A DNA stretch of 63,686 nucleotides, filler included, from Hyphochytrium catenoides (Eukaryota; Protista; Hyphochytriomycota), in assembly GCA_900088475.1 (NCBI GenBank). It is 11 parts of 11 records of this genome, joined end to end, with 100 filler letters (N's around TTAATTAATTAA, not from the genome) between each part and the next. Parts side by side here need not be neighbours in the genome. Positions count along the whole stretch, not along the records: positions 26,405 to 37,456 come from FLMG01003511.1; 10 more parts are not named here. One strand, written 5' to 3'. The notes under the pieces were generated by a model. That model made no database searches. It was not told the DNA's origin and saw only the letters and a program-made list of their open reading frames with translations. Of the stretch, positions 26,405 through 38,232 are shown piece by piece (position 1 is the stretch's first letter; each line of letters begins with the position of its first letter). Both the position numbers and the translations under genes were made by a program.

Positions 26405-29048
26405 ATCAGATACATATTATTATCGTGAGGATACTCTGCTCTATGGACGCGCAGTCTTCGCTCCTGCTCCGCCTCATCGATCACCTCTCCAACGTACTCA
26501 ATCACTAAATGACCAGCACGGATCTTGTCCCTCGTGACGAGGCCCCAGCCTTTGCCCTGCCACACAAGCCAGTGAGAATGGACCAAGAAGAAACATCGAT
26601 GGGGGGCATACAGAATTCTATGCGGCAAGAACGGACGGCGGTTGCTCAAGGGCTTAGACAGAGAGTAACAAGTTTTGCAATGGCGAAGCTCTGAGGGTAT
26701 AGAGAGAGAGACGGTAGCAGGACCCTATGTATGGAGGACTAAATAAATTCATCAGCAGGCCTATACTAGACTCTCACCCCATAAAACTTGGGCATCAGCT
26801 TGGGATAGTCCCGCTTCTGAAGGGAGCGGTTGCCGCAGTCGGAGCCCATCCGACAGTTTACTCGCGCAGAGGCTTTTCCATCAACAACAACTCCATAGCA
26901 CTCAGTCATTGTGGCGCGATTGACACAATCTTCCTTACACGACTCTACATATTCATCCAGCGATGAGCCGGAGAAAGCCCTCAAAAGGCGAAGAATTGGA
27001 AAGAGCCAAAAAAGAAGCACGCAATCGAGAGGGGAAAGTAACAACAAGGCGATAGAATGCTACTGGGGACCCTCACTCTCCCACAAGTCGGTGGAGGCGT
27101 GCACAACGTAGCATTGTGAAGCATAAAAAGGGAGCAGACGCCTTCTCTACCTGTGCAGTTGCAGAATGTCTCCATAGGCTTCACTTTCTGTGGCTTACAG
27201 AGGTAGACGCTCCTCCGTATTCTCTCAAACTGTGGAGGTTGGCTGCGCACCGTCTCAAGAATACTCTTAGGCAAACGGAAGTGAAGGCGATCCGTTATAT
27301 TTGCAGCTGACGGCTGACGTAAAGGAAACTTAATGACAGGCATGACGATGGGCACGGCGCCCTCTGTATTATCGGTTGAAAAGCAGCATTAGATGAGGGT
27401 ATGCAGGTCAGTATCCGTCTCATCATTAGAGCATTGAGAGGCTCTGCCTAGATAGAAACGTACCTTCGATAGCAGCAGAGAGTTCCTCACTATCCTCATC
27501 CGGAGGCAACGTCTTCTCTGGATGGTTGCCGCAGATAAGCACGCTCAAGTTGAATCGTGCGCTGGGAGGAGTGCAGTGAGGATGATATGAAGTGGGGCAG
27601 TACATGCATCGTAATAATCCGCCATGTGTCCGACTCCCGCATACTCTACAAGCGTGATACGGGCAGGCAAAGCCGCTGATGCTTCCTGTTGAGGGGTAGG
27701 AGGTCAAGTGCTAGGTGAACAAATGGCTGAGGGTTGGCGAAGCTAGAGAAGACAAGCACTGCTGATAAGAAAGCAGGGTTAGACTTGGGCCACTGACCTT
27801 CAGTCAGAGGTCGCTTAGAGGTAGACTTTGTGAGCTCGTCCTTCCAGACGCACTTTTCATGGTAGAACTTGCCGCAGCTATATATTCTGCACTTATAGAC
27901 CTTGGAGCTTGATCGACCTGGCAGGAGATGGGATAGAATGCAAGTATTCTAAGGCACGCCGACAACGGAGAGACGGTATAGGACAGGATAGGGCTCGTCG
28001 TCCGAGGGCCTTACCGTATGACGTTTCGCGCTTGTTGCAGATAAAGCAGGTATGTCTCTTGGCGGAACAATCATCGCAGTACCAGTGCGTTTCTTCAGGG
28101 ATCCTATCCATGAAGAGACACTGAAGGTGGAACGACCGCTTACATGGGCCATCGCAGCATACTAAGTCTGAGTTCACCTCATCTTTGATGAGATTACACA
28201 GCGCGCACCAAGGTTCGTTGTAGTCCCTCTTCTCTTGCTCAACATCTTGCTCTGTAATATGCAAGGAAGAGGGGGAGAGAAGAGAAGTGGTTTTGACGTC
28301 ACTCTTAAACCGAGACGTTCGTCTTGTCCTGCTTCCAGTGCTTTCCGGTCCAGGTTCAGTGCTGCTAGTCACTGTCTCTGCCAAGCTGCTTGTCTCAAGT
28401 AATGATTCAGGCTCAGGTGCAGAGTGAGCGTCACCCATGTCCATTGGAGTCAGCTGGTCCTCAGCAGAGGGGGAACTGCACGTTGACTGGGGCTTTACAG
28501 GGGTCTTCCGCAGCCATCTCGCAAACCGAGGGTCATCGCCTGAAGTATGTTGGTGCAGCGGAGCAATGAGAAGAGGATCGTTCCTATCAACCCACTCATC
28601 AAACTTCGCACTCCAGCCCATGTAGTGTATCTAGGCAACGAGGACAAGAGGTCAGCAGGGTAAACAGAAGGCGATAGAGGAAGGCAGGGTGTGTCCTGGT
28701 CAAAGTTCCAGGCGGACTTGCGCCTATTTACCTGCATGAGGTCTTCGTCTAACTTCTGAACCTTTGCAACCCACCATTCGCCTGAGTTTGCGCACTTGAC
28801 ATCAAGCATATCACCTATCTGTATTTGTTTGGCCCAGTCTTCAGGGGGCGCCGTCTGATTCTTGACTTCCGAGCCATTGAGCGCCCTTCTACGGCCTAGA
28901 AAGGACGTAGTACGTAAGGATGTATCCCAAAAAGGGAAGTCAGAAACCGAGGACTTATATCTCTAAGACCCCGTACCTTTCGGGCCTTCTTTGATTGGCA
29001 ACAGCCTATAAGCGTCGTAGCCGCTACTGAAATTCGACTTCTGATCAT
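26405..29048 (-). CDS. NSD/ASH1-like histone-lysine N-methyltransferase (chromo-barrel-like, PHD fingers, AWS, SET), truncated by gap
   Basis: Motifs GDMLDVKC..WWVAKV..IHYMGWSAKFDEWV; PHD WCALC..LVCCDGPCKRSFHLQCL; CPYHACRVC..LLRCMYCPTSYHPHC; AWS CKEDCVNRATMTEC..CGNRSLQKR; SET GKGWGLVTRDKIRAGHLVIEYVGEVID. Confidence 0.88.
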
Positions 29049-30182
29049 GTTCAGAAATGACGGAGAATCGGTTGTCCGGAGGCAGAAGTGAACCTGTCAT
29101 TCTTTCTATGTGTTCTATAGTGTCACTTTCATCACCTCAGCCACCAGGATCTCTTTCGCCTCTCTCAGAAGCTCTAAAAATCCAGTTCCCAGACCAGAAG
29201 AGATCTGCAGTGCGGTCTGCAGATGAAGATGAAGCTTCCGATGCGCAGACCCACAAAAAATAAAGCTTCAGAATCAAATATCCTTGCCCGCCAAACCCAA
29301 ACACACTCTGACGCCAAACCCACTATATTCGCTCGGAGGTATATGTCAGCTGTACACTATGTAGCTCTTCCATACACAAGAGCAGTTGTCAAACCCATGT
29401 AAAGTGTCCAAAGTATGGGCCTGTCTTGTGATTGTGCAGAAGGGGAAAATGGCGGGAAATGATCTAGACCGAAATTTACTTTGCAGACTAGTAGACTAAC
29501 AATGCCTTCTAACCAACTTGTTAGTCTCGGCCAAACCTGTTTCGGATGGTGAGGCCCGAGGCATGCGTTTATTATATCTCAATGAAGAAGTCAATTCTAA
29601 TCCTCCGACAGAGTTATCGTAATCTTAGATAGTTTGCACTATTCTAGGCTGAGTAGCAGATGACCCACCGCGCTTGTCGTAGGAGGATGACAAATCTTCA
29701 GATTCTGATCTCCCAGACTTCTGCAGCCTCAACATGGAGCTCCTCGACGTCCTGAGGCTAATGGCGGGGCATCGTCAGGTTGATAAGCTGGGGACTGCGC
29801 TATGACTCTCTTGGCCAGGGACAAACGGTAGAGTGAAGCCCCGAAACACGATGCAACGATTGTCGGTCTGCTGCATGAGCAGCTTTTTGGTGGGGTTAAC
29901 TTGCGAGAGAGTTGGTCGCCCTTCTCGAAGTGAGGAGAATTAGGTGGCGGAGAAGATAGTAGGAAGAGACCTACTCTAGCGTGGCCCAGCCACTACCCAG
30001 CCCTGCAAACCATTACCGGCTTGGCATGTCGTGGCTACATTGCCATTGCCGCGAAATGGAGGTGACAGTGATGAATTCTCCTAGACGATGGCCTGCTAGC
30101 GCGATCGATCGACGCCTCTTGTGGGCTAAGTCAGAGCGCTGACAGCCAGCTCACCGTATTGATGTGCTTCCAGGCGCCAGTG

Positions 30183-33100
30183 TCACATCCCGTCCATCTG
30201 TCAATAACAGTCAAGACTGGCTAAGCCGAATATGGAGCGCATAGTCACAAGTCAATCTTCTCACCTTGCGCCGCATAGCTTCTCCGACATTGTCCTCGTC
30301 GCCATCGATACCGATGGCATTTATCCCAAGACTGTTGGCCGCCGCTAGTAGGGAACCTCGCCCACAAAAAAGATGGACGATAAGCGGCTTTTGCCTGCGC
30401 TGGCCTTCCTTTTTGCCGCTGATATTATCAAATAAAATGTCAATGCCACCTATCAGGGAACTTCGGACGCTCACTACCCTTTAACTGTCCTCTCTCAATC
30501 CCTTTTGCTCTTTCCGCTCTGTCTCTCCCTCTTCTTTTTGCTTTCTTCTTTTTGCTCTCCTTCTCAGTCGTCTCTCTCTCTCTCTCTCTTTCTGGCTCTT
30601 TTATTCATATCTCTCTTTGATAGCTCTCCTCTTCAATCTTTCCTCTCTTGGTCTGGAGAGTGGAGGCAGCGACTTTACCTCTTCCTGGAGTCTACATCTC
30701 TATGTTCCTGGGCTCCCATCACCTGTTGGGCGAATTGGAGAGCTTCATTCGCTGCCTTGGATCCCAGCGCCTGCCAGGGATCGTCCGGGAAAATGCTCCG
30801 CTCTGTCGGTCAGACATAACGGTTGCGTGAGCACTGCTGCGCCATTGAGCAACAAGAAGGAGAATAAAGAGACAGCGCACCCAAGAGAAAGATAAATAGA
30901 GATAAAAAAAGTGCCTCGGTTCCATAACTAAGTAGACCGGCGGTGCTGATTGAAAGCTTGAGACAAGCTCACCCTCTAAGATGACCTCAGAGGAAGGGAT
31001 GAGGTCCGGGTCTAGGGTTAAGTGGTTCCCATAGCAGAGCAAACTAGCGAATCCTGGCCCTCCTCTTCTTCTCCTTTCCTCCGGGAGCACCACAATCTTC
31101 TTCCAAAGCAGCTGGCAAAGTGTTCCCTTCGATGCAGAGTAGCAGATCCCAGCCATATCCACATATTCCATGTCACTCAAGGTCGACGCGGAGAGCGAAC
31201 TGGACGAATCATCCTTTCCCCCACTAAGGGCCAGTCTCTCATCGAAGCAGTAGATAAAGCCAAGACATCCCTAAGGTTATTGAGAGTTGCCGGTTAGCAC
31301 GTTTTGTAAGTAAACCGGGGCATTGTAACACTCGGGCAGAAATGAAAGAGAAAGAGAGACACAGACACACAGCGAGAGAGGGAGAGGGCGAGAGAGGGAG
31401 AGGGCGAGAGAGAGAAAGAAAGAAAGGAGAAGAGCTAGAAGGAAGGAAGGCGAGAGAAGCGACGAGCGAGGATAGACTAAGATTCAGGAAAGACCAGCGC
31501 ACAAATTGAAGGCAAGAAGAGCTAGCCACGTCAGAGAGGCATGCGAGACAGCCCGAGGCCAGATGAAGAGAGGAAGCGGTCTCACACGCAGCGTGGAAAC
31601 CTAGCAGGGATAAGCCAGAGGTTTGACACAGAGAAATGAACGGGTGAGGGAAACCGTAGAATTGCCTGCACCAAAGAAAGGACAAACAGACAGGTAAGAA
31701 AGGAGAACGCTTACCAATGAGATCTTGCTCAGCAGGATCCGAATCACCCTCAGACTCCATTCTGTATATTCGACGTGTGTCATTCCCTTTAGCGCCGAAA
31801 GAGGAGGAAGAGAGAGAAAGGTCGACGCGAAAGGAGGTATGATCTCAGTCCTCTGAAGGTATTTGACCGGGTCCAATAGAAGAACCTCCCTGGAGCCTAT
31901 TCAGAAAAGGAAGAGAAAGCCACGCACCACAGAAATAGGAAGACGGACAGAGTGAGTGGTTGGAGTGAGAGAGCAAGTGTGAGAGAGGGACCCAACAAAG
32001 AGAGACTGAAAGAGAGAGAGGATAGGGGAGAGACGAGCCTATAGCACAAAAGCCCTAGCTCATTATCAGCGACAAACAGAAGCTCTTAGCCATGAGGATG
32101 TAACATGAGCAAGAAGAACGAAGCAGCATGAGCGTGTGGGTCCCTGCTTCTTTAGACTTTCTAACCTGTTCGCTCCAGACCACTGCTTCCCAACCTCGAC
32201 TCGCTTGTCGTTGAAAGGAGTCCTCTTGTCGTCTTGCTCCTGTCGCTGACCAGAGACCGATAGGCGGCAAGCTCTTGACCCTGGAGGATCGTTAGGTAAG
32301 AGCAGTTAGAAGGATCACGAGGATGCTGCCAGAGAAGGAGCTGCTACCGTCTGAAGATTAAGCTGCGCCTTGGCACTTTTTCTTTGGCTTTCTTCTCGTT
32401 CTAAGGTCTGCTCTTCGGATTTGGACATCGACTCTTGGGCACTGGTAGACCCATCCCCCACCAAGGTGTCAGAAAGCGAAGACGCCAGTCTTTCCTCGCT
32501 AAAAGCTCCAAGAAGATCTGCGAAGAGTCTCCGATAGTCAATGGTTCGGCTTCCTGGAGAGCTTTGATATACTTCCACTAAGACCTCTACCTCCTCTTTT
32601 GATACGGAGGGAGAGAGAGAAAGAAGAGACAGAGCCGCTTCTAGTTCTTCAGCAAGTACGTAGCCGCTGCCTTGCTCGTCCATCCCCTCTAGAACCCCTG
32701 GCAGCTGGTTGCCCTCTCGATGGCTGAGAATCTTAAGCAATACGTCCTTTTGTCTCAGTTCTGTTGCCTGTGAACCGATAATGTTTCCTTTCTCTTCTAC
32801 CGCTAATTCTCTATGTGAATCCTGAGAGGAAACTGCAAGAAGGTCGAGTGTCGTCTCCTTCTTCTCTTCCTCTAGCGTTTCTGACGAGGGAAAGAGGTCT
32901 CGTCTATCTTTATGCCTTGATTCGTCTCTTTCTATTCGCTCTGCTAACGCTCTGACAAGGCGTTCTAAATAGCCACTTTGACTTGTAACGACTTGATAGT
33001 CTCTAGTATGGAGAGAGGCCATTCCTTCCACCCTCTCCCTCAGTAGTCGTAGGTCGTGCTCCACTTTCTTATCGTTCCTGTGTGAGTAACGAAGGCGGAG

Positions 33101-36100
33101 CGGAGCTGAGAAGAAGATAACGACTGACGCTGAGGCGTATGGGCTCATTTAGGGACAATAGGATAAATGCCTTCCAGCGAGCAGTACACAGACAAAGTGG
33201 ACGGTGGTAACACTGACCGAGGAGAAAGTTAAGGGAAGGGAAAGGGAGAAGAAGAGGGATAGAGAGCTTCATTGTTTCTTTCTCCCCTGGGGAGACGCCC
33301 ATCTAAAAGAGGCTCTTAGAGGTCGAAACCCGCATCAATTTAGGAAGGTATAGAGAGCTCAGAGGCTAATAAGCAGGATGTTTTAAAAGTGCCTAAAGAG
33401 GCTACCGCGTACCTTTCGAAGGGTTGGACGCCATATGAAGTAGCACTTCTCAAGCCTTCCCTTCCCACCATAGCTTGCCCTCTGTCTCGCGGTTGCTTAC
33501 CCCCACTAGTGGTTGAGCTAGCAGGCCCAGGGGCAGAGGAGGGCCTGGTCCTTCGTGGAGGAGATGGCGTGGAAAGTCGCGCTACCCCAGGAGAAGAGAG
33601 ATTGGGCGAGAAGGATGTAGAGTCCTCTTTCTCTACACTCAGATGTTGAGGCCCGTGATCTTGGACGAAGGCTTTCCCAAAGCCGCTAAGGAAAAACACT
33701 CATTAGTAAGTAGAGGGAAGAAAGCTACCCGATCTTGTCTACGGCGGAGGAGGGGAGAGCCCCGGGAGAACTGAAATAGGCAGAATGACTTAAGTTTTTG
33801 AGGAGTAGAAGGAGCCAAAGGAGGATAGTCGTAGCACAACACGAGAGACAGATGTCAAGCGGCATTGCAGGACGTCCGTAAGAGGCAGCGGGCACGCACA
33901 GTCTTTCTGCCCACTCTCTAACGGCAGTGACGTCTCTTGGACTTGGATCAGCCGAGAGCCACCTCCGCACTTGCCGCCGGCCCTATGAAGGGAAAGAGAT
34001 TGCGAAAGGTGAGGCAAGAAGTATGCGAGAGAGGTTGAAGCGATAAGGGAGCTAAGGTCTCATCAGGAACGAAATGTGAACGGGAAGGTAATGATAAATC
34101 AATGTGCCTCTGAAGCTACCTTTGTCTTCTCTCTCCTTGGCGTGGATGGTCTACTTCTTTCTCGTGGGGAGGGCGAAGGTTCACGAGTCCAATCACGGCT
34201 TTTACTCTCCTCCGCTCTGGTCAAATGGAGGTAGGGAGAGAGTCAGGTGTGACAGATGAGGTACTTGAGATGGTTGAACGGACAAACAGAGAAAGAGAGG
34301 CAGAGTGAATTTCTGTATTTAACAGAGAAGTTTGATACAGAAGAGGTAGAAAAATAGAGGAGATAGGGAGAGAGACGGAACAATTGAAAGGAGAACCCTG
34401 ACCTCATAAGGTTGGCAGCAGAAGAGCGCAACTGGTCTTCCCACTTCTTCTTATCCTCGAACACTCCTTCCACTACTCTCTCTGGTCTTCCTCTGGGGGT
34501 CGAGGGCCGCGATAGGCTCTTGGGCTGGCTTCGGAGAGTGTCATGGGCGAGCTGGTTCAAGGAGATGAAGGTTAAGACCCGCAGATAGAGATAGACAGGC
34601 AGGACCGAAATGAGAGACAGAGAGAGGCAGGGAAAAGAGAAAGAGAGGGGGAGAGAGAGAGAGAGAACGAGAGAGAGATTGCGGAGAGAACGAGAGCGAG
34701 GGAGAAGGGAGAGAGAGGAAGGGGCAGGGAGGAAATGAGCGCAGAGTTCCAAGGAGGTCTTAAGTGGGACCAGTAGAAAGGTAATGGTTATGAGAGATTC
34801 ATGGCTGAGCTCCATCATCTAAAGCCCAACTGAAATGCTGCCATTAGGTACGTTCAAGGCTCGGTCCATCTCTTCCCTGCTGGCTCTTCTTATCCTCGCC
34901 CGTCTCTCCCTTCACCATTGTCTGTGTCTCTTTCCCTCTGTCTTTCTCTCCTTTGGTTTAGATATCTCTGTCTTAGGATTGCAATTTTAGGCTTACCTGC
35001 TGCCTTCGATTAGGTGTGACACTTCTGCCCCTTCCATTGCTGGACGTCAGTGTAATCGGGCTTGGTTCTATCTTCGGAGAGGCTGGAGCCGAAAAAGACC
35101 CGAGAGGCGTCTCAGAGTCTCGTTCTCCGTTTCTCTCCTCGTGTCTGTCGGTCTTCTCTCTCTTGCGCTTGACTACAGTAGGGGTTGGAGGTCTGCTCAG
35201 AGGCCGTCGTTCGACCATATTATAGTCCTCCCTTCCGCGGATGTCCTCCCTTGCTGGCTCTCTCTTCTTTATCGCGGACCCCAACTGATGTCTAAGAGCA
35301 TTCCCGTCCAAGACCTCTAGCTGCAAGTGAGAGCAAGAACCCAGGAGAGACAAAGAAAACTCTTCATGAGACAGGGGGCAGGAGGTAGATCAGATGTTGG
35401 GACAACGGCGTAGTGGTAGACGCAGGAGAGGAGTGGGCCCGCAAACTGAGTGGATGAACATTGACTAAGAGACAGCAGCAATGGGAAGACATAGAATGCG
35501 ATTAAGGCGGGGGATGGGAAGGAAGAGTCATGCTCAGGAGGAAACGAAGAGAAAGGGAATGGCATGAGTGGGACCGCAGCGAGAGCAAGAACAGAGAGAG
35601 AGAGAGAGAGAAAAGGGAGAAGAAAGAGAGAGACACACACAAGCAGGAAGAAGAAGAAAGAGGTAAAAGGAGAGCAAGAGAAGAGGAGATTAACCGGAAA
35701 TATGGGAAGCGTTCGTTAACCGAGGCGTAGACTCACCGCTGGAAGGAGGTCGCGCATATGCGCTCTGTAGGTTTTGGACTCCGAGACCTCGTTCCCTTCA
35801 CATCTCAACCTCTTCAAGCTCTTACAAAGCGCAAGCGAGCGAAGAGAGAGAAAGGAAGAGAGAGAGTTATAGGAGAGATCAAGAGAGGAGAGAACGTCTA
35901 GGTGCTCAATCCCTTCTACGACTCTAAGCTGGTTGTGGGAGAGGTTCAGCTCGCGGAGGGAAGTTAAGAAGAGAAAGCCTTGGCCTATCTTCCTGAGAAG
36001 ATTATAGCTGAGGTCGAGGTACTGAAGGTTCGGGAGATAGAGAGGAGAAAGTGGTGTCTCTTCTTTCTCCCGTCGTTCTCTCTTCTCTCTTCTCTCTTCC

Positions 36101-36661
36101 CGCTCCACCCACAGGCGAGAGAGACGGTTGTGAGAGACATCAAGATGGACAAGAGATCGGAGAGGAAGGTGAAGGAGGCAATCAAGAGAGGAAAGGTGAT
36201 TTCCTTGCAGCTCCAGCCGCTGAACAGGAGAGAAAGCAGAGAGAAGAGATGGAGACCGATTGTTTTCTTGTCTCTGTGGGCACGAGACACGCAAAAGAGC
36301 TGCCACATCCTTCACCTCTAGTCCCTCGTTAGCGAAAGAGAGAGTAACAAAGGATGGAGAAGAAAGAGACTGGGTGGCTTCTCTCTCTCGGTCCTGAGCT
36401 GTCTCTCTATTCTTAGTGGCCTCACTGGGAGTGCGTGGAGAAGAGACATCTCCGCTTTCTGTGCCTAGAACTGCAGGAGAAAAGGAAGGAAACGGGTTTT
36501 CTGTTCTCTCAAGGACGGTGGCGCTTCTCTCTCTATCTCTCACTGTCGGCTCCTCCTCCTCGCGAGCTCTAGACGGAGATCGATTAGTAGGGAGTGTGCA
36601 TACAAGTTACCCACAGCACGATATCCCAACAGGGAGGAGAGAGGCGCGATCAGAGACAGGA

Positions 36662-36705
<44 letters not shown>

Positions 36706-37018
36706 GAGAAGAGAAAAAGAGAGGGAGAGGGAGAACTGAGTAGCCAGCCGGTCGCTAAATGGAGTTTCAACGGGAGAGAGAGAGAAGAAGAGAAGAGAGA
36801 TGCGCAGAGATGTGATGGGAGATGTCCCAGAGGCAAAGAGCAGGGGAAGAAGAGAGGCGCAGCCATGAAGATAAGAGAGAAACTTACTCGATGGAGCTCC
36901 CGGACGGACTTCCACTCTCAAAGGGCTCGTCACCATAAGCCGCCGGAGCTTCAGAAAGAGGAGCAGGTAGCGCAAGGGAAGGCGCTGAGGGAACCGTCTC
37001 TTCCGGACTCTGCTCCAT
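30183..37018 (-). CDS. Multidomain protein: LRR, low-complexity linker, EF-hand pair and bacterial-type SAM-dependent methyltransferase (~14 exons)
   Basis: ATG at 37018 (MEQSPEETV). All inferred GT-AG junctions are phase-compatible. LRRs LQYLDLSYNLL and LRELNLSHNQL; EF-hand-like MDEQGSGYVLAEEL..TIDYRRLF; MTase-like REVLLLDPVKYL..FLSLPP..LLWKKIV..WQALG..IVHLFCGRGSLLAAANSLGINAIGID. Confidence 0.75.
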
Positions 37019-38232
37019 AAGGAGAGGGCCTCTCCGTCTTATAAATTCTCTCTCTCTCGCGTTCTATTCCCTGCCCGTGTCTGCCTGCCATTCGCAGGTG
37101 GGTTGGCGGCTTTCGGAGTGAGCGAGGCTGGAGAAACAGATGAGGGTTGAGAGCAATGCGTGAATTTGGGGTTATCAAGAGGGAAAGAGAGCGAGAGAAG
37201 AGACAGTCAGCTCTTTCTTAGTGAGAAAGAGGGAAGGAAGGGCGGATTCCCCCTAAGACGGTGATGAAAGAGCGAAGCAAATAGCAAGGTTGATAATCGA
37301 GAGACGAGCCGCTCGCTGTCCATCATCGTAAAGAAGCGGAGGCGAAGAGAAATGGAGCTGAGGGGCAAAAATAAGCACAGAAAGTGAAGAGAACAGGTTA
37401 AATGGGAGAGGGAGAGAGAGCGCGCGAGAGAAAGAGAAAGAGACAGAGAGAGAGAGNNNNNNNNNNNNNNNNNNNNNNNNNNNNNNNNNNNNNNNNNNNN
37501 TTAATTAATTAANNNNNNNNNNNNNNNNNNNNNNNNNNNNNNNNNNNNNNNNNNNNGAGAGAGAGAGAGAAAGAGAGGGGGAGACAGAGAAAGAGAAGTG
37601 AGAGAGAAAGAGACGAAAAAGAGAGGGGGACAGAGAAAGAGAGTGAGAGAGAGAGAGAAAGAGAAGAGAAAGAGAGGGGGAGAAAGAGAACAGAGAGAGA
37701 GAGAGAGATGTCTTGATCTGCTAGAAGGAGAAGACAGTACAAGGACAAAGGACTGGAAGTGGAGGAGTAAAGATTCGAACACGGAGAGGAAGGTCATACA
37801 AGCCCCACTGCAAAGGAGAGAGAGTCATGAGAGAGAGAGGAAAACGAGAGAGCAGAGCAGAAGAGGAGAGAGAGAGAGAGAGGTGATCAGGACAACGTCC
37901 TATGGAAAGGAAAGAGACGACCAATAGCCAATGGCCAGAACGACGGAATAAGCAGAGCAGCAGTAAGAGAAAAGAGAAGAGAGCGAGGGTGGATAGAGAG
38001 AAAGTCTCTGGAAGAAAGAGCGAGGAACTTAAATGGCAAAGCTGGAGAGAGAGAGAGACAGATAGAGAGAGAGAGAGAGAAATAGGGAGAGAGCGCGAAA
38101 AACACAGAGGCCCGAGAAGCAAGGAGGCGGTATAAGAGAGAAAGGAGAGGAAGCTAAAGGTAAACAAGCAAGAGTCCGCTTATAATGTGACAAATAAATA
38201 TCGGTTCTGTGAATCACTCTCTCTCTCACTCC

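What the first reader, a model, noticed from the sequence alone, without database searches (positions are those of the whole stretch)
30183..37018. LRR + EF-hand protein carrying a C-terminal bacterial-type beta-class (N4C/N6A-like) methyltransferase domain
Seen: a phase-consistent exon chain on one contig links LRRs, an EF-hand pair and an MTase-like domain (..LQT|GQELAAY..LERT|GSREVLLLDPVKYL..). The motif order is permuted, with the motif IV-like FLSLPP near the domain start and the SAM-binding HLFCGRGS..AIGID at the end. Known: that order defines beta-class amino-MTases, and eukaryotic co-option of such an enzyme is established for bdelloid N4CMT. From recall, it most resembles an uncharacterised bacterial family (TSLPD..LLWHKIV..W.xAMG..VVDPFCGxGTVLAVAN). 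Inference: a domesticated, intron-invaded bacterial MTase under Ca2+ or protein-interaction control. The altered motifs (SLPP, D>H) may mean a new substrate or a pseudo-enzyme.
Basis: partly seen in the sequence, partly recalled or inferred. Interest (0 to 1): 0.75.

Follow-up and report, generated by a model that had tools for sequence, protein, structure and literature searches.

The report
Degenerate methyltransferase-like domain on LRR protein
An intron-rich protist gene ends in a worn-down copy of a little-studied methyltransferase family shared by algae, protists and myxobacteria; it has lost about half of that family's near-invariant residues, so it is more likely a binding module than an enzyme, and its link to the upstream leucine-rich-repeat part is unproven.

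Summary
The observation mostly holds. On the minus strand, 13 GT-AG exons (37018-30183) form a phase-consistent chain of 1194 codons. The LRRs are solid by Pfam. The "EF-hand pair" is only weakly supported. The last three large exons each match, in collinear order, a family with consensus TSLPD..QSD..WIDK..WHK..RPxYSH..DPFCGxGT. A model of one family member has the beta-class (permuted) amino-methyltransferase fold.

The family is not simply bacterial. It occurs in chrysophytes, Mesostigma and Euglena, in some viral contigs, and among bacteria almost only in Myxococcota. It fits the "Clade 2" permuted MTases that Iyer, Zhang and Aravind described in 2016.

At checked positions at least 97% conserved across 107 members, the window copy differs at nine, and a second-species orthologue differs at the seven it covers. 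The glycine loop and the motif-II acid remain. This points to a conserved pseudo-enzyme or a repurposed SAM-binding domain.

Fusion to the EF-hand-like exon is likely. Fusion to the LRR part is unproven: no RNA runs were listed, and linker exons E5-E7 have no codon-usage support.

Verdict: a new variant of a known kind, of moderate interest.

The parts
36888..37018 (-). E1: start codon and 43 codons of an acidic/Pro-rich N-terminus; donor GTAAGT, phase 2
   Evidence: boundaries and phase; the proposed frame scores best by codon usage
35737..36568 (-). E2: about five SDS22-like 22-residue leucine-rich repeats, preceded by a disordered stretch
   Evidence: LRR_8 6.8e-15, LRR_4 1.9e-13, LRR_9 4.5e-6; only generic LRR relatives found
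34997..35320 (-). E3: LRR cap (LEVLDGNAL) followed by a basic, Ser/Pro-rich disordered stretch. If the donor is not used, the frame stops 8 codons later, which leaves room for a separate LRR gene
33413..34551 (-). E4 (34551-34403), E5 (34216-34120), E6 (33982-33729) and E7 (33685-33413): low-complexity linker exons. E4 is supported by codon usage and E5-E7 are not. The E6/E7 intron is only 43 nt. E4 could also splice straight to E8 in frame
32348..33077 (-). E8: predicted long helices, then an EF-hand-like helix-loop-helix pair at 32695-32489. The first loop reads DEQGSGYVLAEE. The second loop is degenerate, with Arg at position 12
   Evidence: troponin C, centrin and CDPK3, E 0.02-0.1; EF-hand clusters among the neighbours; no Pfam hit; model pLDDT 50, not usable
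32166..32280 (-). E9: 38-codon linker exon (GQELAAY..LERT)
31715..31896 (-). E10: first part of the MTase-like domain (strand REVLLLD, helix, strand-4 motif SLPP at 31813-31802, helix EYTEWSLRVIRILL). An in-frame stop lies 3 codons upstream of the exon and no Met precedes the domain start, so an upstream exon is needed
   Evidence: hhalign prob 93.7, E 1.9e-7, family columns 23-86
30973..31270 (-). E11: middle of the MTase-like domain (IYCFD, YVDM, LLWKKIVV, GFASLLCYG, DPDLIP), with a Ser-rich insert
   Evidence: phmmer against 1.84 billion proteins finds only P0001 at 2e-10 and P0002 at 1e-4; hhalign E 6.7e-8; 43% identity to the orthologue
30265..30449 (-). E12: SAM-binding half. Motif I is IVHLFCGRGS (30375-30352), then helix LLAAANSLG, then motif II AIGID
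   Evidence: hhalign prob 97.1, E 5.3e-11; N6_N4_Mtase positions 188-216 of 221, 17 bits, below cut-off; 48-69% identity over 26-46 aa to myxobacterial loci
30183..30197 (-). E13: 4 codons (MDGM) and the stop. The MTase-like domain is therefore C-terminal
   Evidence: The orthologue L001 likewise ends 10 codons after the homologous junction

Best explanation
This is a real, spliced eukaryotic gene. The host is unidentified; I only guess it is alveolate-like.

Its C-terminal ~220 residues (E10-E13) are a divergent member of the 'SLPD' family of circularly permuted, beta-class-fold methyltransferase-like proteins. That family is very probably the 'Clade 2' of Iyer, Zhang and Aravind (2016).

In this lineage the domain keeps its structural core, the Gly-loop for SAM (FCGRGS) and the motif-II acid (GID). 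It has replaced about half of the residues that are at least 97% conserved in the family: D of SLPD, F122, Q of QSD, K of WIDK, H of WHK, R of GRP, H of YSH, and D-P of DPFCG.

The most likely reading is that it no longer performs the family's reaction. It would instead serve as a conserved binding or scaffold module, possibly still binding SAM. It is attached to a coiled-coil plus a degenerate EF-hand-like pair (E8), and probably to an N-terminal SDS22-like LRR interaction domain (E1-E3). The analogy is METTL14/Kar4.

Shown: the exon anatomy, family membership by profile, the family's fold, the residue losses, and conservation in a second species.

Inferred: loss of catalysis, retained SAM binding, and the single-transcript fusion with the LRR part. 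I put the LRR fusion at about 0.55-0.6 and the E8-E13 linkage at about 0.85.
For: Gene model: all 13 exons have GT-AG boundaries, consistent phases and no internal stop.

Family membership: three exons match the family profile independently and collinearly.

Fold: the model of family member P0007 has pLDDT 80 and a core above 90. Its best Foldseek matches are TTHA0409, the bdelloid N4CMT (8s9m), CcrM, M.PvuII, M.RsrI and M.MboIIA. 25 of 27 members hit PF01555.

Residue losses: across 107 family members, D99, F122, K160 and P256 are 100% conserved, H178, H198 and D255 are 99%, and R193 is 98%. The window has P, S, M, L, K, S, H and G at these sites. The orthologue L001 has I, K, A, Y, E and L at the six of these sites it covers. 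Q143, also 100% conserved, is Cys in both copies by eye.

Retained features: CGxG, L264 and G276 are kept.

Orthologue: L001 comes from another organism and is 43% identical over E11. It has intact exons, and the same intron positions and phases at E10/E11, E11/E12 and E12/last exon. This means long-term purifying selection, not decay.

Need for an upstream exon: E10 has no start codon before the domain and an in-frame stop just upstream.
Against: No transcript data: no RNA run was listed.

By instruction, the joined spliced domain was never searched or folded. The fold is therefore shown for the family, not for this copy.

The function of the parent family is unknown, so 'loss of catalysis' is judged only from the loss of conserved residues. 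Glu in L001 and His in the window, at the D of DPFCG, may still be compatible with SAM binding. A changed active site could also mean a new activity.

Linker exons E5-E7 have no codon-usage support.

No full-length orthologue with the same architecture was found.
Confidence: 0.55

Rival explanations
1. There are two genes rather than a fusion. An LRR protein would be encoded by E1-E3 (or E1-E4), ending at the stop 8 codons past the E3 donor. A separate gene would start at or near E8; an ATG at 33148 opens the E8 reading frame. That second gene would encode the coiled-coil, the EF-hand-like pair and the MTase-like domain, about 530 aa in all.
For: E5-E7 score no better than introns in the codon-frame test. 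The E6/E7 intron would be only 43 nt, whereas the other introns are 67-523 nt. The stop-to-stop frame that contains E8 begins exactly at an ATG. Other eukaryotic family members, such as P0002 on L082, are stand-alone. No orthologue with LRR plus MTase was found.
Against: A fully phase-consistent GT-AG chain exists. Even E4 to E8 directly is in frame. E4 does have coding-frame support. No stand-alone ~430-aa orthologue of the LRR part was found. Only about 1.3 kb separates E4 from E8, and long open frames on the same strand run throughout it.
Confidence: 0.35
2. The domain is still an active SAM-dependent methyltransferase with a re-tooled active site and a new substrate. One candidate is RNA or DNA N4-cytosine, as predicted for 'Clade 2'. 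Another is a protein recruited through the LRR. The EF-hand-like pair would regulate it.
For: The glycine loop, the motif-II acid and the Ser of the strand-4 motif are kept. The domain has been conserved under selection in two species. Iyer et al. predict RNA N4C activity for S-type permuted clades (PMC4738411).
Against: Nine checked positions that are at least 97% conserved in the family have changed (eight in the table, plus Q143 by eye). At several of them the two orthologues differ from each other: K160 is M or I, H198 is S or Y, R193 is G or A, and D255 is H or E. That pattern fits relaxed constraint on an old active site better than a new, fixed one. There is no aromatic residue in the strand-4 motif. 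The second EF-hand loop lacks its Ca2+ ligands.
Confidence: 0.2
3. The MTase-like exons are a decaying remnant, that is, a pseudogenised tail that is not functional.
For: Many family-invariant residues are lost. No exon passes the Pfam cut-off.
Against: The reading frames are intact and the splice sites canonical. An orthologue at 43% identity keeps open exons, the same intron positions and lineage-specific conserved motifs such as LLWKK, LLCYGN and CGxGS. E11 and E12 have clear coding-frame codon usage.
Confidence: 0.05

Closest known systems
'Clade 2' circularly permuted MTases of Iyer, Zhang and Aravind 2016 (BioEssays 38:27, PMC4738411). This was a computational survey and the clade has not been characterised experimentally.
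   Same: The topology is permuted. The strand-4 motif is unusual and starts with Ser. The nearest prokaryotic relatives are in myxobacteria, and there are viral relatives. Distribution in eukaryotes is sporadic.
   Different: Identity with Clade 2 is inferred from the paper's description only, because no sequences from the paper were on hand. The paper reports frequent PPR fusions. Here the partners are an LRR and an EF-hand-like region, and no PPR was detected. This copy has also lost the family's near-invariant residues.
Bdelloid rotifer N4CMT (PF01555; PDB 8s9m/8s9n/8s9o; PMC8885841)
   Same: It is a beta-class permuted fold inside an intron-containing eukaryotic gene, fused to a eukaryotic domain. 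It is the second-best structural match to the family model.
   Different: N4CMT has a canonical SPPY-type site, is a proven 4mC DNA MTase, and was acquired recently from bacteria in a single lineage. The family here has SLPD (SLPP in the window), has no known activity, and is widespread in protists. Sequence identity to N4CMT is about 16%.
Type II beta-class DNA amino-MTases (TTHA0409, CcrM, M.PvuII, M.RsrI, M.MboIIA)
   Same: The fold and motif order match: the catalytic half comes first and motif I (FxGxG) last. The family's vvTSLP aligns to VVTSPP of TTHA0409.
   Different: The [DNSH]PP[YFW] motif is absent. No restriction partner or other conserved neighbour is found in 80 bacterial loci. 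The family has its own set of invariant polar residues (Q, D, K, H, K, R, H, D).
Catalytically dead MTase-fold partners such as METTL14/Kar4 and the DIRS1 MTase domain (as discussed in PMC4738411)
   Same: The fold is conserved, the active-site motifs are disrupted, and the domain is kept under selection as a binding or scaffold module.
   Different: These belong to a different clade (MT-A70 and PCIF1-like). No active partner subunit has been identified here.

Membership tests
Pfam N6_N4_Mtase (PF01555) / beta-class amino-MTase | Score above the Pfam gathering cut-off (26.7 bits) | tested here: not met
   The best exon (E12) scores 17.0 bits, E 0.006, on profile positions 188-216 of 221. E10 and E11 give no hit. 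The joined domain was not submitted, by instruction. Intact family members do pass: P0007 scores 33.9 bits, and 25 of 27 members hit.
Pfam N6_N4_Mtase (PF01555) / beta-class amino-MTase | Permuted order: strand-4 catalytic motif N-terminal, SAM motif I (FxGxG) C-terminal | tested here: met
   SLPP lies in E10 and FCGRGS in E12. The gene ends 4 codons after E12. The exons match family columns 23-86, 109-161 and 203-234 in order.
Pfam N6_N4_Mtase (PF01555) / beta-class amino-MTase | Strand-4 motif [DNSH]-P-P-[YFW] | tested here: not met
   The window has S-L-P-P. The whole family has S-L-P-D, with D conserved in all 105 members that have a residue there (of 107 aligned). The motif aligns to SPPY of TTHA0409.
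Pfam N6_N4_Mtase (PF01555) / beta-class amino-MTase | Class-I Rossmann MTase fold | tested here: inconclusive
   The fold is shown for family member P0007 (pLDDT 80; Foldseek E 4e-12 to 2zie and 2.7e-11 to 8s9m). It is not shown for the window's own domain, which is split over three exons and was not joined.
SLPD family (probable 'Clade 2' of PMC4738411) | Significant collinear profile match over the whole domain | tested here: met
   hhalign E 1.9e-7, 6.7e-8 and 5.3e-11 for E10, E11 and E12. hmmsearch scores are 17-30 bits per exon. tblastn matches myxobacterial loci.
SLPD family (probable 'Clade 2' of PMC4738411) | Family-invariant residues (D99, F122, Q143, K160, H178, R193, H198, D255, P256 in P0007 numbering) | tested here: not met
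   All nine are substituted in the window. The orthologue L001 covers seven of them (Q143, K160, H178, R193, H198, D255, P256) and all seven are substituted; D99 and F122 are not covered. S96, P98, D159, K179, C258, G259, G261, L264 and G276 are kept.
EF-hand pair | Match to Pfam EF-hand models | tested here: not met
   No EF-hand family is listed even at E<=1 for E8.
EF-hand pair | Two helix-loop-helix units with canonical 12-residue Ca2+ loops | tested here: inconclusive
   Loop 1 is D-E-Q-G-S-G-Y-V-L-A-E-E, with positions 1, 5, 6, 8 and 12 acceptable and Q at position 3. Loop 2 lacks acidic ligands and has R at position 12. The best PDB hits are troponin C and centrin, at E 0.018-0.1. Among the language-model neighbours, those with a Pfam family carry EF-hand families; the top three carry none. 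The AF2 single-sequence model is unusable, with pLDDT below 50 in this region.
Leucine-rich repeat (SDS22-like) | Pfam LRR models above cut-off, with tandem LxxLxLxxNxL units and a cap | tested here: met
   LRR_8 scores 55 bits (cut-off 27), LRR_4 50.6 and LRR_1 33.9. About five repeats plus LEVLDGNAL at the start of E3 can be read directly.

The most novel reading that the evidence does not exclude
The C-terminal domain is a functional SAM-binding module, either a sensor or a re-tooled enzyme with a non-canonical S-L-P-P site. It would be physically coupled in one ~1200-aa protein to a Ca2+-responsive EF-hand-like pair and an LRR targeting domain. That would be a new signalling-linked use of an uncharacterised methyltransferase family shared by eukaryotes and Myxococcota.
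Probability: 0.15. Interest if true: 0.7.

Novelty: new variant of a known kind. Interest (0 to 1): 0.4.

Why it matters
The SLPD / 'Clade 2' family is a conserved group with a beta-class MTase fold and no experimentally known substrate. It has been found in 171 bacterial loci (nearly all Myxococcota), in several eukaryotic supergroups, and in some viral contigs.

This locus shows that the family has also produced a degenerate, selectively maintained copy placed at the end of a large multi-domain protist protein. That is a candidate pseudo-methyltransferase.

The copy is a useful natural 'mutant' for finding out which family residues matter. It also adds to the list of MTase folds recycled as non-catalytic modules.

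It is not evidence for a new DNA modification system in this organism.

Tried and rejected
1. RNA evidence: the look-up of sequencing runs listed no run, so read laying could not be used.
3. A possible extra mini-exon at about 30809-30727 (..IFPDDPWQALGSKAANEALQFAQQ..) was considered. It was rejected because joining E11 directly to E12 is phase-consistent and aligns well to the family (KGIGLD against GGIDIL), and because the orthologue has its intron at the same position and phase.
4. A word search with the E11 open frame gave nothing, being limited to proteins of 100-320 aa. The ESM-atlas feature search with E11 gave no usable hit.
5. A metagenome scan for E11 orthologues found none.
6. An exact look-up of the E8 ORF found nothing on record.
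7. A word search with the LRR exon returned only generic LRR proteins. It found neither an orthologue nor a stand-alone ~430-aa counterpart.
8. A single-sequence AF2 model of E8 had pLDDT 50 and was not used for fold search.
9. Conserved-neighbour analysis of 80 bacterial loci found only a Ser/Thr kinase, in 20 of 80. I judge, untested, that this could be background for kinase-rich Myxococcota. No R-M partner appeared.
10. HMMs built separately from eukaryotic and bacterial members did not discriminate the origin of the window copy.
11. The joined spliced protein was deliberately not built, searched or folded. All searches were exon by exon, by reference.
Full report
SCOPE. Only the piece 26405-37456 was used. 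The gene lies on the minus strand. The joined protein was never built, searched or folded. 

1. EXON CHAIN.
Stop-to-stop frames on the minus strand, read against the sequence, give a 13-exon model. Its exact boundaries were checked by script:
- E1 37018-36888
- E2 36568-35737
- E3 35320-34997
- E4 34551-34403
- E5 34216-34120
- E6 33982-33729
- E7 33685-33413
- E8 33077-32348
- E9 32280-32166
- E10 31896-31715
- E11 31270-30973
- E12 30449-30265
- E13 30197-30183

Every intron is GT..AG with a pyrimidine-rich acceptor. All phases agree and there is no internal stop. The total is 3585 nt, or 1194 codons plus the stop.

A leave-one-out codon-frame test was trained on the Pfam- or profile-supported exons and on the neighbouring SET gene.
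- The proposed frame scores best for E1-E4, E8, E11 and E12.
- E7, E9 and E10 are equivocal.
- E5 and E6 get no support, scoring no better than introns.

The E6/E7 intron would be only 43 nt. E4 can also be joined in frame directly to E8. The chain is therefore real as a possibility, but its middle is uncertain.

2. LRR PART.
E2 carries strong LRR signals: LRR_8 at 6.8e-15, LRR_4 at 1.9e-13 and LRR_9 at 4.5e-6. About five 22-residue SDS22-like repeats can be read. The cap (LEVLDGNAL) sits at the start of E3, which ties E2 to E3. A word search with E2 found only generic LRR proteins.

3. EF-HAND CLAIM.
- Pfam finds no EF-hand in E8 even at E<=1.
- phmmer against PDB gives troponin C, centrin/caltractin, CDPK3, FAP115 and a dynein light chain as the best hits, at E only 0.018-0.2, over exon residues 128-196.
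- Among the language-model neighbours of that segment, those that carry a Pfam family carry EF-hand families, at scores of 0.91-0.93. The top three neighbours carry no family.
- Loop 1 (DEQGSGYVLAEE) is near-canonical. Loop 2 lacks its acidic ligands and ends in Arg.
- The single-sequence AF2 model was too poor to use.

Verdict on this point: a degenerate EF-hand-like pair is probable, at about 0.7. Ca2+ regulation is speculative.

4. MTASE-LIKE DOMAIN.
On its own, E12 shows only a generic motif I: N6_N4_Mtase at 17 bits against a 26.7 cut-off, with MetW and Trm11 at a similar level.

A full phmmer pass with E11 over 1.84 billion representative proteins found just two proteins.
- P0001 is an ORF fragment from a Logan contig, at 2e-10 and 43% identity.
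- P0002 scored 1e-4.

P0002 opened a family of 43 proteins. The family consensus is R.V..DAL.WL...SV.TSLPDVSEL...W..WF...F.QSD...WIDKSFL...WHKIV...GRP.YSHLLC...PDV...G.M.W.K.MG...IVDPFCG.GTVLA.ANA.G.DA.GVE.

The three window exons match this profile separately and in order:
- E10 matches columns 23-86, E 1.9e-7.
- E11 matches columns 109-161, E 6.7e-8.
- E12 matches columns 203-234, E 5.3e-11.

Most family members (25 of 27) hit PF01555 through their C-terminal motif I. The family profile finds TTHA0409, CcrM, the Adineta N4CMT and M.MboIIA in PDB. An AF2 model of the Mallomonas member P0007 has pLDDT 80 and a core above 90. Its best structural matches are beta-class amino-MTases: 2zie at 4e-12, 8s9m at 2.7e-11, then 6pbd, 1boo, 5hfj, 1eg2 and 1g60. 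MT-A70 proteins come next.

The permuted beta-class assignment is therefore sound for the family, and by collinear homology for the window copy.

5. WHAT THE FAMILY IS.
Named eukaryotic members come from Mallomonas and Epipyxis (chrysophytes), Mesostigma and Euglena. P0002 sits on a eukaryotic contig next to genes that I read as RFC-like (a P-loop motif, plus a faint Rad17 hit) and ING/SGF29-like. It is stand-alone.

A scan of one genome per prokaryotic species found 171 loci. Nearly all are Myxococcota, including Polyangiaceae, Myxococcaceae, Labilithrix, Nannocystis and Kofleriaceae. None has a conserved neighbour or an R-M partner. Nine IMG/VR contigs, one labelled as a giant-virus MAG, also carry the family.

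In place of [DNSH]PP[YFW], the family has S-L-P-D. This aligns to SPPY of TTHA0409.

This picture fits the 'Clade 2' permuted MTases of Iyer, Zhang and Aravind (PMC4738411). The paper describes them as permuted, with an unusual strand-4 motif starting with S, related to myxobacterial and viral versions, sporadic in eukaryotes, often PPR-fused, and predicted to make N4-methylcytosine in RNA. I could not compare sequences with that paper, so the identification is probable rather than proven.

I found no experimental work on the family.

6. WHAT IS SPECIAL ABOUT THIS COPY.
I aligned 107 members (27 proteins plus 80 bacterial loci) and read off the near-invariant positions. The window and the orthologue compare as follows.

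| Family position | Conservation | Window | L001 orthologue |
|---|---|---|---|
| D99 (of SLPD) | 100% | P | not covered |
| F122 | 100% | S | not covered |
| Q143 (by eye) | 100% | C | C |
| K160 | 100% | M | I |
| H178 | 99% | K | K |
| R193 | 98% | G | A |
| H198 | 99% | S | Y |
| D255 | 99% | H | E |
| P256 | 100% | L | L |

Both copies keep the structural positions and the SAM-loop positions: S96, P98, D159, K179, C258-G259-x-G261, L264, G276 and the motif-II acid.

'SLPP' and 'D>H' are thus real.

The orthologue contig L001 (1388 bp) holds the end of E10, then E11, E12 and a short last exon. Its introns fall at the same positions and phases: 0 at E10/E11, 1 at E11/E12 and 0 at E12/last exon. 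They are much shorter (70 nt at E10/E11, and by my reading about 230 nt at E11/E12), and all frames are open. Lineage-specific motifs are shared: IYC.D, LLWKK, LLCYGN and CG.GS.LA.AA..G..AIG.DG.E.N.

This is the signature of a domain kept under selection after its ancestral active site was abandoned. Where the two orthologues differ from each other at former invariant sites, relaxed constraint is a better fit than a new catalytic set.

7. FUSION.
E10 begins three codons after an in-frame stop and has no Met before the first strand of the domain. The domain therefore cannot be expressed without upstream exons. E9 and E8 are joined to it by clean sites. I put the E8-E13 linkage at about 0.85.

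The link from the LRR part to E8 depends either on the weak exons E5-E7 or on a direct E4-E8 splice. The LRR frame would also end 8 codons past the E3 donor if that donor is unused, and the E8 frame opens at an ATG (33148). I put the full LRR fusion at about 0.55-0.6.

8. ORIGIN.
Subgroup HMMs do not tell a eukaryotic from a myxobacterial affinity. An insert between QSD and WIDK is shared with eukaryotic members, which hints at descent within eukaryotes. 'Domesticated bacterial MTase' is possible, but the direction of transfer between eukaryotes and Myxococcota is open.

VERDICT. The thing is a new, degenerate, fused variant of a known but uncharacterised MTase-fold family. It is most likely a non-catalytic module. 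Interest is moderate.

Noticed in passing
window 26405-28962, minus strand (runs off the piece edge at 26405): The downstream neighbour on the same strand is an NSD-like histone lysine methyltransferase gene. It has a weak Tudor/chromo-like match, three PHD-type fingers (PHD, PHD_NSD, PHDvar_NSD), an AWS domain and the start of a SET domain, spread over several exons. It is separated from the MTase-like gene's stop (30183) by about 1.2 kb.
   Followed up: partly
L002-L081 (genome contigs): Bacterial members of the SLPD family are confined almost entirely to Myxococcota (171 loci found, 80 kept). They are orphan genes with no restriction enzyme or other conserved neighbour. A Ser/Thr kinase lies within 5 kb in 20 of 80 loci, which may simply be background.
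   Followed up: partly
L083-L091 (viral contigs): Nine IMG/VR contigs, one of them labelled as a giant-virus MAG (GVMAG-M-3300014204-73), encode family members at 30-36% identity to the Mallomonas protein. This agrees with the viral relatives mentioned for 'Clade 2' in PMC4738411.
   Followed up: no
A1 / P0007 numbering; family-wide: The family carries its own set of invariant polar residues (D99, Q143, D145, K160, H178, K179, R193, H198, D219) instead of the classical DPPY-type site. This suggests a chemistry or substrate different from known amino-MTases, and no experimental study was found.
   Followed up: partly
window 33728-33686, minus strand: The putative 43-nt E6/E7 intron contains a TACTAAT branch-point-like motif. 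All other introns of the model are 67-523 nt, and many hold long CT/GA dinucleotide runs, for example at 36740-36650 and 34700-34620.
   Followed up: no
L001 (Logan SRR28521184 contig, 1388 bp): This is the only detectable orthologue of the degenerate domain among 1.84 billion representative proteins. It has the same intron positions but much shorter introns (70 nt, against 444 nt in the window). The source organism is unknown.
   Followed up: partly
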